This document shows positions 5,207 through 5,278 of a stretch of 64,000 nucleotides of DNA, one piece after another. The notes below the pieces were generated by a model. It was not told where the DNA came from and searched no databases. It saw only the letters and a list, made by a program, of their open reading frames with translations. The DNA is from Octopus sinensis (Eukaryota), in contig NC_043003.1 in assembly GCF_006345805.1 (NCBI RefSeq), forward strand, positions 6,386,001 through 6,450,000. The letters are read 5' to 3'. The position numbers and the translations under genes are program-made. Position 1 is the stretch's first letter; every line of letters begins with the position of its first letter.

Positions 5207-5278
5207 CTTGACAAAGATTGCTATCAGAGTGTTCCCAGCATGCATCACTTACCTGGAAAGAAAAAAAAAAAAAGAAGG
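5207..5278 (-). other. Candidate recursive splice site / 46-nt cryptic exon of the host gene
   Basis: Minus strand reads ccttcttttttttttttttctttccag|GTAAGT (junction 5253/5252); a second donor AAG|gtcagt lies 46 nt downstream (5207/5206). Confidence 0.5.

What the first reader, a model, noticed from the sequence alone, without database searches (positions are those of the whole stretch)
5207..5278. Recursive-splice-like site (3'ss directly followed by GTAAGT) on the host strand, deep in a long intron
Seen: the minus strand reads a long pyrimidine tract + CAG followed immediately by the consensus donor GTAAGT, and a second donor (AAG|gtcagt) lies 46 nt further on. It is on the same strand as the exon at 44061-44207, ~39 kb downstream, with no other exon I could find in between. 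Established: this AG|GT plus short cryptic exon layout defines recursive (ratchet) splice sites in long Drosophila and vertebrate neuronal introns. I know of no description in cephalopods. Inference: a recursive site. Alternatives: spliced to the phase-1 exon the 46-nt exon gives ...VLG-G-K-stop (poison or terminal exon); in phase 0 it is open (VSDACWEHSDSNLCQ) and could be a coding microexon.
Basis: partly seen in the sequence, partly recalled or inferred. Interest (0 to 1): 0.72.

Follow-up and report, generated by a model that had tools for sequence, protein, structure and literature searches.

The report
Recursive-splice-like site in octopus DNA
A textbook-perfect "acceptor fused to donor" splice motif with a short cryptic exon sits in repeat-rich octopus DNA and looks able to work as a recursive splice site. 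Nothing available here shows that it is used, conserved, or inside a gene.

Summary
The minus strand reads a 24-nt pyrimidine tract (including T13), then CAG|GTAAGT (AG ends at 5253, GT starts at 5252). A second donor, AAG|GTCAGT, lies 46 nt further on. Of 422 AGGT sites in the window this one scores 22.7 bits; the next best scores 10.8.

Every sequence-level hallmark of a ratchet point is met:
- branch-point-like motifs upstream
- a 113-nt zone free of AG
- a regenerated consensus donor that is stronger than the cryptic-exon donor
- a 46-nt exon that is out of frame and carries a stop codon

The context is not established. The supposed upstream exon (44061-44207) has no protein homolog and looks like an exon on both strands, though its CpG cluster suggests it is a real unit. 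No other cellular coding sequence was found in the window. Conservation and RNA evidence could not be tested. By chance, a few to a few hundred such motifs are expected per octopus-sized genome. A second T-run next to GTAAGT on the other strand weakens the chance model.

Verdict: a splice-competent candidate recursive site. I put real use at about 0.4 and a chance, unused motif at about 0.35. If real, it is a new member of a known kind.

The parts
5279..5304 (-). Branch-point-like motifs upstream of the acceptor: gTTAC with A at 5279 (-27), and TTGAT with A at 5292 (-40) and at 5304 (-52). No AG occurs for 113 nt upstream of the acceptor.
   Evidence: motif match only, no lariat data
5255..5278 (-). 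An uninterrupted 24-nt polypyrimidine tract, CCTTCTTTTTTTTTTTTTCTTTCC, which includes T13 (5261-5273).
   Evidence: Acceptor score is 15.2 bits, the best in the window. 16 of 16 upstream pyrimidines occurs at 0.2% of window positions.
5251..5254 (-). The AG|GT junction, i.e. the candidate ratchet point. The acceptor AG is 5254-5253 and the donor GT is 5252-5251.
5247..5252 (-). GTAAGT, the consensus donor that would be regenerated once an upstream exon is ligated at 5252. With the ...GAG end of 44061-44207 it reads GAG|GTAAGT and scores 7.5 bits. TGA at 5247-5245 is the in-frame stop if the 46-nt exon is kept after a phase-1 exon.
5207..5252 (-). The 46-nt candidate cryptic recursive-splicing exon. 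Its length is not a multiple of 3. It is open only in phase 0. It gives Gly-Lys-stop in the phase set by 44061-44207.
   Evidence: No protein homolog in any frame of 4800-5780.
5201..5206 (-). The second, weaker donor AAG|GTCAGT (4.4 bits, with C at +3), which would define the cryptic exon.
   Evidence: The chance of a donor this good within 25-100 nt is about 5%.
5062..5178 (-). A degenerate (CAT/CAC)n microsatellite. It lies in the 139 nt just downstream of the cryptic exon's donor, where there are 18 YCAY motifs against 2.8 expected. This is context only; a role as a splicing enhancer is speculation.
44061..44207 (-). It is 147 nt, with acceptor 7.1 and donor 6.9 bits and one open frame ending in phase 1. 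All 9 of its CpGs fall inside these bounds. It has no protein homolog and is also exon-like on the plus strand (44068-44216).

Best explanation
This is a splice-competent composite acceptor-donor element of the ratchet-point type on the minus strand.

Proposed mechanism (inferred, not shown):
1. The region is transcribed as part of an intron of at least 44 kb in a minus-strand gene.
2. The 46-nt segment 5252-5207 is recognised by exon definition, through its very strong acceptor and the weak GTCAGT donor.
3. The upstream exon is ligated at 5252, removing the first roughly 39 kb as a lariat.
4. This regenerates a consensus donor (GAG|GTAAGT), which outcompetes the weaker downstream donor.
5. 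The 46 nt are therefore removed with the rest of the intron and leave no trace in the mRNA.
6. If the 46 nt were retained, they would introduce a stop codon two codons after the junction.

What is shown: the signals exist, they are exceptionally strong, and their relative strengths fit the donor-competition rule. What is inferred: transcription of this strand, the identity of the upstream exon, and any actual use of the site.
For: Motif and statistics:
- The motif is unique in the window, with 0 of 100 shuffles matching.
- It is the top of 422 AGGT sites by 12 bits.
- Its acceptor, 15.2 bits, is the best in the window, and its donor is at the matrix maximum.

Fit to published criteria:
- Branch-point-like motifs lie at -27, -40 and -52, with a 113-nt AG-free zone. 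PMC6110456 reports branch-point enrichment 20-50 nt upstream.
- The regenerated donor (7.5 bits) is stronger than the cryptic-exon donor (4.4 bits). This is the rule that decides skipping in flies (PMC8605326) and is usual in human (PMC6110456).
- The cryptic exon is about 50 nt, out of frame and contains a stop codon, as described for recursive-splicing exons.
- AGGTAAGT plus a pyrimidine-rich upstream region is what separates recursive from non-recursive AGGT sites in mouse (PMC8797253).
- The implied intron length of at least 44 kb matches the lengths where recursive sites occur.

Context hints:
- The candidate upstream exon holds all 9 local CpGs, with observed/expected 0.90 against 0.40 for the window.
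- T exceeds A by 6.4% on the minus strand in non-repeat DNA, in 7 of 8 bins.

Alternatives not seen:
- The core has no other copy in a window that is 43% self-repeated.
- It has no protein or RNA-family match.
Against: - There is no RNA evidence and no cross-species comparison of any kind.
- The only anchor exon has no homolog in two very large protein searches. The first of these libraries is shown to hold O. bimaculoides proteins.
- That exon is also exon-like on the plus strand.
- No Pfam domain appears on any non-repeat minus-strand ORF.
- Chance expectation genome-wide is not negligible, at about 5 to 500 depending on stringency.
- A second T-run next to GGTAAGT lies on the opposite strand at 57215-57241. 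This suggests the two elements may not be independent in this genome, which would make the chance model too generous.
- The T13 homopolymer could be a recent, unstable feature rather than a conserved tract.
- Recursive splicing has not been described in any lophotrochozoan.
Confidence: 0.4

Rival explanations
1. A chance juxtaposition. A homopolymer-derived pyrimidine tract happens to abut CAGGTAAGT in non-functional, repeat-rich DNA. The site is not used, or only as splicing noise.
For: - Expected chance sites per 2.7-Gb genome run from a few to several hundred, depending on stringency.
- The window is packed with microsatellites and homopolymer runs.
- A T15 followed by GACATG|GTAAGT on the other strand shows that such near-motifs do arise here.
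- No gene could be demonstrated around the site.
- In mouse, only about 20 of millions of genic AGGT sites are recursive.
Against: - The full architecture is rare by chance: about 1e-4 to 1e-2 per window for the ratchet motif, times about 0.05 for the downstream donor.
- Every additional feature checked fits a working site, namely the branch points, the AG-free zone, the donor hierarchy and the stop codon.
Confidence: 0.35
2. An ordinary but unannotated alternative exon that happens to begin with GTAAGT. It could be a poison, terminal or coding micro-exon, or an exon of a non-coding transcript. In this case 5252-5207, or a longer version, is included in some mature RNAs and does not serve recursion.
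For: - In mouse, 46 of 84 AGGT sites with junction reads proved to be unannotated exons, against 19 recursive sites (PMC8797253).
- The segment is open in phase 0.
- The strong acceptor and a usable donor define a plausible 46-nt exon.
Against: - The regenerated GTAAGT donor is much stronger than GTCAGT. By the donor-competition rule, the exon should then be skipped.
- 46 nt does not preserve the reading frame and gives a stop in the only phase that can be proposed.
- The peptide has no homolog.
Confidence: 0.14
3. A plain donor site. In this reading an exon ends at ...CAG (5253), GTAAGT is its normal 5' splice site, and the T-rich tract is exonic, for example in an untranslated or non-coding exon.
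For: CAG|GTAAGT is also the consensus exon-intron junction. Acceptor-like sites exist upstream at 5365, 5646 and 5747.
Against: Those upstream acceptors are weak, at 2.3 to 4.4 bits. A 24-nt pyrimidine run ending in CAG is the signature of an acceptor, not of exon sequence. No ORF or homolog was found.
Confidence: 0.05
4. Part of a mobile element or a plus-strand feature. Candidates are the poly(A) tail of a retroposed fragment (plus strand ...ACTTACCTGGAAAG-A13), a U1 snRNA-derived fragment, or a plus-strand gene. The minus-strand motif would then be a by-product.
For: - On the plus strand, A13 follows ACTTACCTGG, which equals the first bases of U1 snRNA.
- A second locus reads, in the same orientation, ATACTTACC-ATGTC-A15.
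- A 5-nt AGAAG repeat flanks 5187-5273, which would be a possible but very weak target-site duplication (read directly).
Against: - No other copy of 5179-5397 exists in the window.
- The two loci do not align beyond the short motif.
- There is no Rfam hit, even at E up to 10.
- No polyadenylation signal precedes the A-run.
- There is no protein homolog in any frame.
Confidence: 0.04

Closest known systems
Drosophila intronic ratchet points with cryptic recursive-splicing exons (Ubx, kuzbanian, Beadex; Hatton 1998, Burnette 2005, Duff 2015, Joseph and Lai; read here as PMC8605326 and PMC6110457)
   Same: - A T-rich tract followed by AG|GTAAGT.
- A short cryptic exon of about 50 nt that is out of frame.
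- A downstream donor weaker than the regenerated one, which predicts complete skipping.
- A host intron of tens of kilobases.
   Different: - The fly sites are ultraconserved and proven by junction reads, sawtooth coverage, lariats and mutants. None of that is available here.
- The host gene is unknown.
- The organism is an octopod, where the mechanism has not been described.
Vertebrate recursive splice sites and their exons in long neuronal genes (Sibley 2015; read here as PMC6110456 and PMC8797253)
   Same: - An AGGTAAGT core complementary to U1.
- A pyrimidine-rich upstream region and a branch-point motif 20-50 nt upstream.
- A cryptic exon carrying a premature stop codon.
- An intron length above about 40-50 kb.
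   Different: Vertebrate sites are defined by conservation (PhastCons at least 0.5) and by RNA evidence. They sit mostly in first or second introns of identified brain genes. Here both the gene and the intron rank are unknown.
Recursive-splicing-like cryptic exons and unannotated exons at AGGT sites (PMC8797253)
   Same: The same motif and the same exon-definition layout.
   Different: Those are detected as exon-like coverage and are partly included in RNA. Here the donor hierarchy argues for skipping, but inclusion cannot be measured.
Exonisation of antisense poly(A) tails of retroposons (for example antisense Alu exons in primates; from my own knowledge, not tested here)
   Same: A long T-run, which is an A-run on the other strand, supplies the polypyrimidine tract of a new acceptor.
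   Different: No retroposon could be recognised around the A-run. It has no other copy in the window, no convincing target-site duplication and no polyadenylation signal.

Membership tests
Recursive splice site (ratchet point) | Juxtaposed 3' and 5' splice sites around a central AG|GT | tested here: met
   CAG|GTAAGT at 5255-5247 on the minus strand
Recursive splice site (ratchet point) | A strong acceptor: a polypyrimidine tract and a branch point 20-50 nt upstream | tested here: met
   A 24-nt pyrimidine run scoring 15.2 bits, the best in the window. Branch-point-like motifs at -27, -40 and -52, with an AG-free zone of 113 nt. This uses my own weight matrix, not MaxEntScan.
Recursive splice site (ratchet point) | A strong reconstituted donor after the first splicing step | tested here: met
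   GAG|GTAAGT scores 7.5 bits, against 6.9 for the candidate exon's own donor. This is conditional on the upstream exon being 44061-44207.
Recursive splice site (ratchet point) | A downstream donor that defines a short cryptic exon and is weaker than the reconstituted donor | tested here: met
   AAG|GTCAGT lies 46 nt downstream and scores 4.4 bits. The chance of such a donor being there is about 5%.
Recursive splice site (ratchet point) | A cryptic exon that is out of frame or carries a premature stop | tested here: met
   46 nt, giving ...VLG-G-K-stop when joined to the phase-1 exon. This is conditional on that exon and phase.
Recursive splice site (ratchet point) | Location on the sense strand, deep in a long intron (tens of kb) of an expressed gene | tested here: inconclusive
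   - The candidate exon 38.8 kb upstream has good splice signals and a CpG cluster.
- It has no homolog and is exon-like on both strands.
- No cellular domain is found in the window.
- The T>A skew favours the minus strand only weakly.
Recursive splice site (ratchet point) | Evolutionary conservation of the core motif | not testable with these tools
   No cephalopod genome is in the searchable DNA collections. Two metagenome scans found nothing.
Recursive splice site (ratchet point) | Recursive junction reads, sawtooth intron coverage or lariats in total or nascent RNA | not testable with these tools
   No RNA data are available.
Transposable-element-derived or repeated sequence | Further copies elsewhere, or a transposon protein or RNA signature | tested here: not met
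   - No second copy of 5179-5397 exists in a window that is 43% self-repeated.
- No protein homolog in six frames of 4800-5780.
- Copy number across the whole genome was not testable.
U1 snRNA gene or pseudogene (plus strand ACTTACCTGG) | A match to the U1 covariance model beyond the 5' end | tested here: not met
   No Rfam family at gathering score in the window. No U1 hit at E up to 10 in 4800-5700.
Coding micro-exon | A conserved peptide and frame preservation | tested here: not met
   46 nt is not a multiple of 3. No homolog to any frame.

The most novel reading that the evidence does not exclude
Octopus uses ratchet-point recursive splicing, with a skipped cryptic exon, to remove very long introns. 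This site would be the first example outside insects and vertebrates. That would imply either that the mechanism is ancestral to bilaterians or that it arises repeatedly wherever introns grow to tens of kilobases. It would also give a motif with which to map such sites across cephalopod genomes.
Probability: 0.35. Interest if true: 0.55.

Novelty: new member of a known kind. Interest (0 to 1): 0.33.

Why it matters
Recursive splicing has been shown only in flies and a few vertebrates. Whether it is a general answer to very long introns is still debated, for example by the lungfish study read.

Cephalopods have large, repeat-rich genomes and long neuronal genes. A verified site would extend the mechanism to a third major animal lineage. 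It would also make a genome-wide test straightforward, by comparing sense and antisense motif counts in long introns.

As it stands this is one unverified motif. Its value is as a precise, cheap hypothesis that public octopus RNA-seq data can test.

Tried and rejected
1. Identifying the host gene from the upstream exon failed. There was no word-sharing candidate and no phmmer hit among 1.84 billion representatives.
2. Looking for any other cellular exon in the window failed.
   - Pfam on all non-repeat ORFs of at least 40 aa gave nothing on the minus strand and only mariner transposase remnants on the plus strand.
   - A splice-signal and ORF scan gave only 44061-44207, an antisense-LINE candidate at 6090-6354, and two unconvincing ones.
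3. Six-frame peptides of 4800-5780 gave no homolog at E up to 1. A coding or transposon-protein origin for the site is therefore rejected.
4. Non-coding RNA is rejected. Rfam found nothing at gathering score, only sub-threshold noise locally, and there are no tRNAs.
5. The site is not a repeat within the window.
6. Metagenome scans for the site DNA and for a back-translated exon peptide both found 0.
7. Strand-biased hexamers (AATAAA, GTGAGT and others) were considered as evidence of transcription direction and rejected. The differences are explained by base skew and by a (GAGT)n array.
8. Homology between the site and the second T-run/GTAAGT locus was not supported by alignment.
9. A giant concatenated-ORF homology search was considered and dropped, because it would produce millions of spurious word matches.

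Full report
**What is there**

On the minus strand the sequence reads gttaCCTTCTTTTTTTTTTTTTCTTTCCAG|GTAAGTGATGCATGCTGGGAACACTCTGATAGCAATCTTTGTCAAG|GTCAGT. The coordinates are:
- pyrimidine tract 5278-5255, including T13 at 5273-5261
- acceptor AG at 5254-5253
- consensus donor GTAAGT at 5252-5247
- the 46-nt segment at 5252-5207
- second donor GTCAGT at 5206-5201

**Is it more than chance?**

Within the window, yes.
- The strict pattern Y8NCAGGTAAGT occurs once, against 0 in 100 dinucleotide shuffles.
- CAGGTAAGT alone occurs twice, against 0.77 expected.
- This is the only YAG|GTRAG on either strand with at least 13 of 16 upstream pyrimidines.

I scored sites with a simple weight matrix whose frequencies are human-like and written from memory.
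- The acceptor scores 15.2 bits, the best in the window.
- The donor scores 8.56 bits in its native CAG context, the matrix maximum.
- The second donor scores 4.4 bits.
- Among all 422 AGGT tetramers the site totals 22.7 bits against 10.8 for the next best, z = 4.6.

At genome scale the picture is less clear.
- CAGGTAAGT is expected 0.25-0.7 times per 128 kb of strand sequence.
- A 16-of-16 pyrimidine tract precedes 0.2% of positions.
- Combining the window's own tract and core score distributions gives about 1e-4 sites per window at the observed score and about 0.01 at 20 bits or more. That is roughly 5 to 500 chance sites in a 2.7-Gb genome.
- A donor of at least 4.3 bits within 25-100 nt downstream has about a 5% chance.

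So the full layout is rare by chance, but not impossible across a whole genome.

One caveat weakens the independence assumption. The plus strand at 57215-57241 reads T15-GACATG|GTAAGT. This means two of the four longest T runs in the window are followed within 8 nt by GGTAAGT. The two loci do not align beyond the short motif, and I cannot explain the coincidence.

**Anatomy compared with published criteria**

Papers read here list these features of recursive sites:
- AGGT in a long intron
- a strong acceptor
- a branch-point motif 20-50 nt upstream
- a strong reconstituted donor, enriched for AGGTAAGT
- a downstream donor defining a recursive-splicing exon, usually weaker than the reconstituted donor
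- frequent premature stops in that exon
- high conservation
- junction reads, sawtooth coverage or lariats

The sources are PMC6110456, PMC8797253, PMC8605326 and PMC6110457.

At this site:
- Branch-point-like motifs lie at -27 (gTTAC) and at -40 and -52 (TTGAT).
- No AG occurs for 113 nt upstream.
- The reconstituted donor GAG|GTAAGT (7.5 bits) beats AAG|GTCAGT (4.4 bits).
- The 46-nt exon is out of frame and gives Gly-Lys-stop after the phase-1 exon.

By the donor-competition rule shown in flies, this arrangement predicts complete skipping of the cryptic exon, that is, zero-nucleotide recursion.

**What the region is not**

- It is not a repeat within the window, although 43% of the window has another copy in it.
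- It is not protein-coding or derived from a transposon protein. Six-frame peptides of 4800-5780 have no homolog at E up to 1.
- It is not a known RNA family and there are no tRNAs.
- The plus-strand ACTTACCTGG is simply the complement of the donor consensus. There is no U1 hit.
- The reading 'ordinary exon ending at 5253' has only weak acceptors upstream, at 2.3-4.4 bits.

**Context**

The window is octopod DNA. A LINE-type ORF at 41411-41872 is 75-86% identical to Octopus bimaculoides proteins. The window is full of SINE-like arrays and microsatellites.

The host gene is the weak point.
- All nine CpGs of the neighbourhood fall inside its bounds. Its observed/expected ratio is 0.90 against 0.40 for the window, placing it in the top 1.1% of non-repeat 147-nt windows. 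That suggests a constrained or otherwise distinct unit.
- Its peptide has no homolog in the word-indexed search of 5.8 billion proteins, nor in a full phmmer scan of 1.84 billion representatives.
- The same segment is also exon-like on the plus strand: 44068-44216, acceptor 8.1, donor 3.5, open frame.
- No non-repeat ORF of at least 40 aa on the minus strand has a Pfam domain. The plus strand shows only mariner remnants.
- T exceeds A by 6.4% on the minus strand in non-repeat DNA, in 7 of 8 bins. From my own knowledge of vertebrate introns, this is the direction expected for the sense strand, but it is weak evidence.
- The uniformly low CpG content would fit a methylated gene body. That too is an inference from general knowledge.

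**Judgement**

The sequence is a splice-competent recursive-type element. I put the probabilities as follows:
- about 0.4 that it is really used as a ratchet point
- about 0.35 that it is an unused chance motif
- about 0.14 that it is an ordinary unannotated exon
- small shares for a plain donor site or a by-product of a mobile element

**Novelty**

In the held literature, 'recursive splicing' and 'cephalopod' co-occur only in one reference list. A 2024 preprint lists flies, mice and humans as the species where the phenomenon is established. If confirmed, this is a new member of a known kind in a new lineage. It would be interesting but not surprising, and it can be tested with public RNA-seq.

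Noticed in passing
window 57215-57241 (+): T15-GACATG|GTAAGT is a second long T-run directly followed by a consensus donor, on the opposite strand from the finding. Together with the acceptor-like ...cccctag| at 57189 it would bound a 46-nt segment. Two such loci occur against 0.00 expected in shuffles. They share no homology with each other beyond the motif.
   Followed up: partly
window 44061-44216, both strands: The only CpG-retaining, non-repeat, exon-like unit in the window has 9 CpGs in 147 nt, against a window observed/expected ratio of 0.40. It has an open frame and splice-like signals on both strands. The minus-strand peptide has no homolog anywhere, and the plus-strand ORF has no Pfam domain.
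   Followed up: partly
about 15 copies, e.g. 8597, 11009, 12188, 20354, 28262, 37315, 42472 (+); 21183, 22948, 27159, 54944, 55860, 56947, 60728 (-): An abundant SINE-like repeat carries a near-consensus donor near its start, GGAGTGGCTGTGTG|GTAAGTAGCT. It accounts for almost half of all GTAAGT hexamers in the window. Inside the putative intron, 3 copies are in the minus (sense) orientation and 7 are antisense.
   Followed up: no
window 6090-6354 (-): Antisense to a LINE fragment (on the plus strand, about 5811-6550) lies an exon-like segment with strong splice signals (acceptor 8.3, donor GTGAGT 7.0) and an open frame. It sits only about 840 nt upstream of the candidate recursive site. Its phase does not fit the 44061 exon.
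   Followed up: partly
window 5062-5178 (-): A degenerate (CAT/CAC)n microsatellite follows the cryptic exon. The 139 nt after the exon's donor hold 18 YCAY motifs against 2.8 expected. In vertebrates and flies, YCAY clusters downstream of an exon are Nova/pasilla enhancer sites. Here it may be nothing more than a microsatellite.
   Followed up: no
window 2805-3334, 34863-35233, 48162-48709: Tandem arrays of 2-3 copies of a 184-nt unit containing a tRNA-like GGTTCAAATCC-type box. They look like SINE-derived satellite-like arrays and occur in both orientations. ARAGORN and Rfam call nothing in them.
   Followed up: no
window 520-1556 (+) and 25281-25873 (+): Frameshifted remnants of Mos1/mariner-type transposases (Pfam HTH_48 and Transposase_1).
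   Followed up: partly
window 41411-41872 (-): A LINE-type ORF with a PHD-like zinc finger, 75-86% identical to several Octopus bimaculoides 'uncharacterized' proteins. This identifies the window as octopod.
   Followed up: yes
whole window: CpG is strongly depleted (observed/expected 0.40; 0.22-0.48 in 4-kb bins, except 0.67 at 60-64 kb). A exceeds T on the plus strand by 6.4% in non-repeat DNA. This is compatible with a methylated unit transcribed from the minus strand, but there is no genome-wide baseline to judge it against.
   Followed up: partly
window 12373-12863: A 239-nt unit duplicated in tandem at 98% identity, containing a SINE-like segment. This looks like a very recent local duplication.
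   Followed up: no
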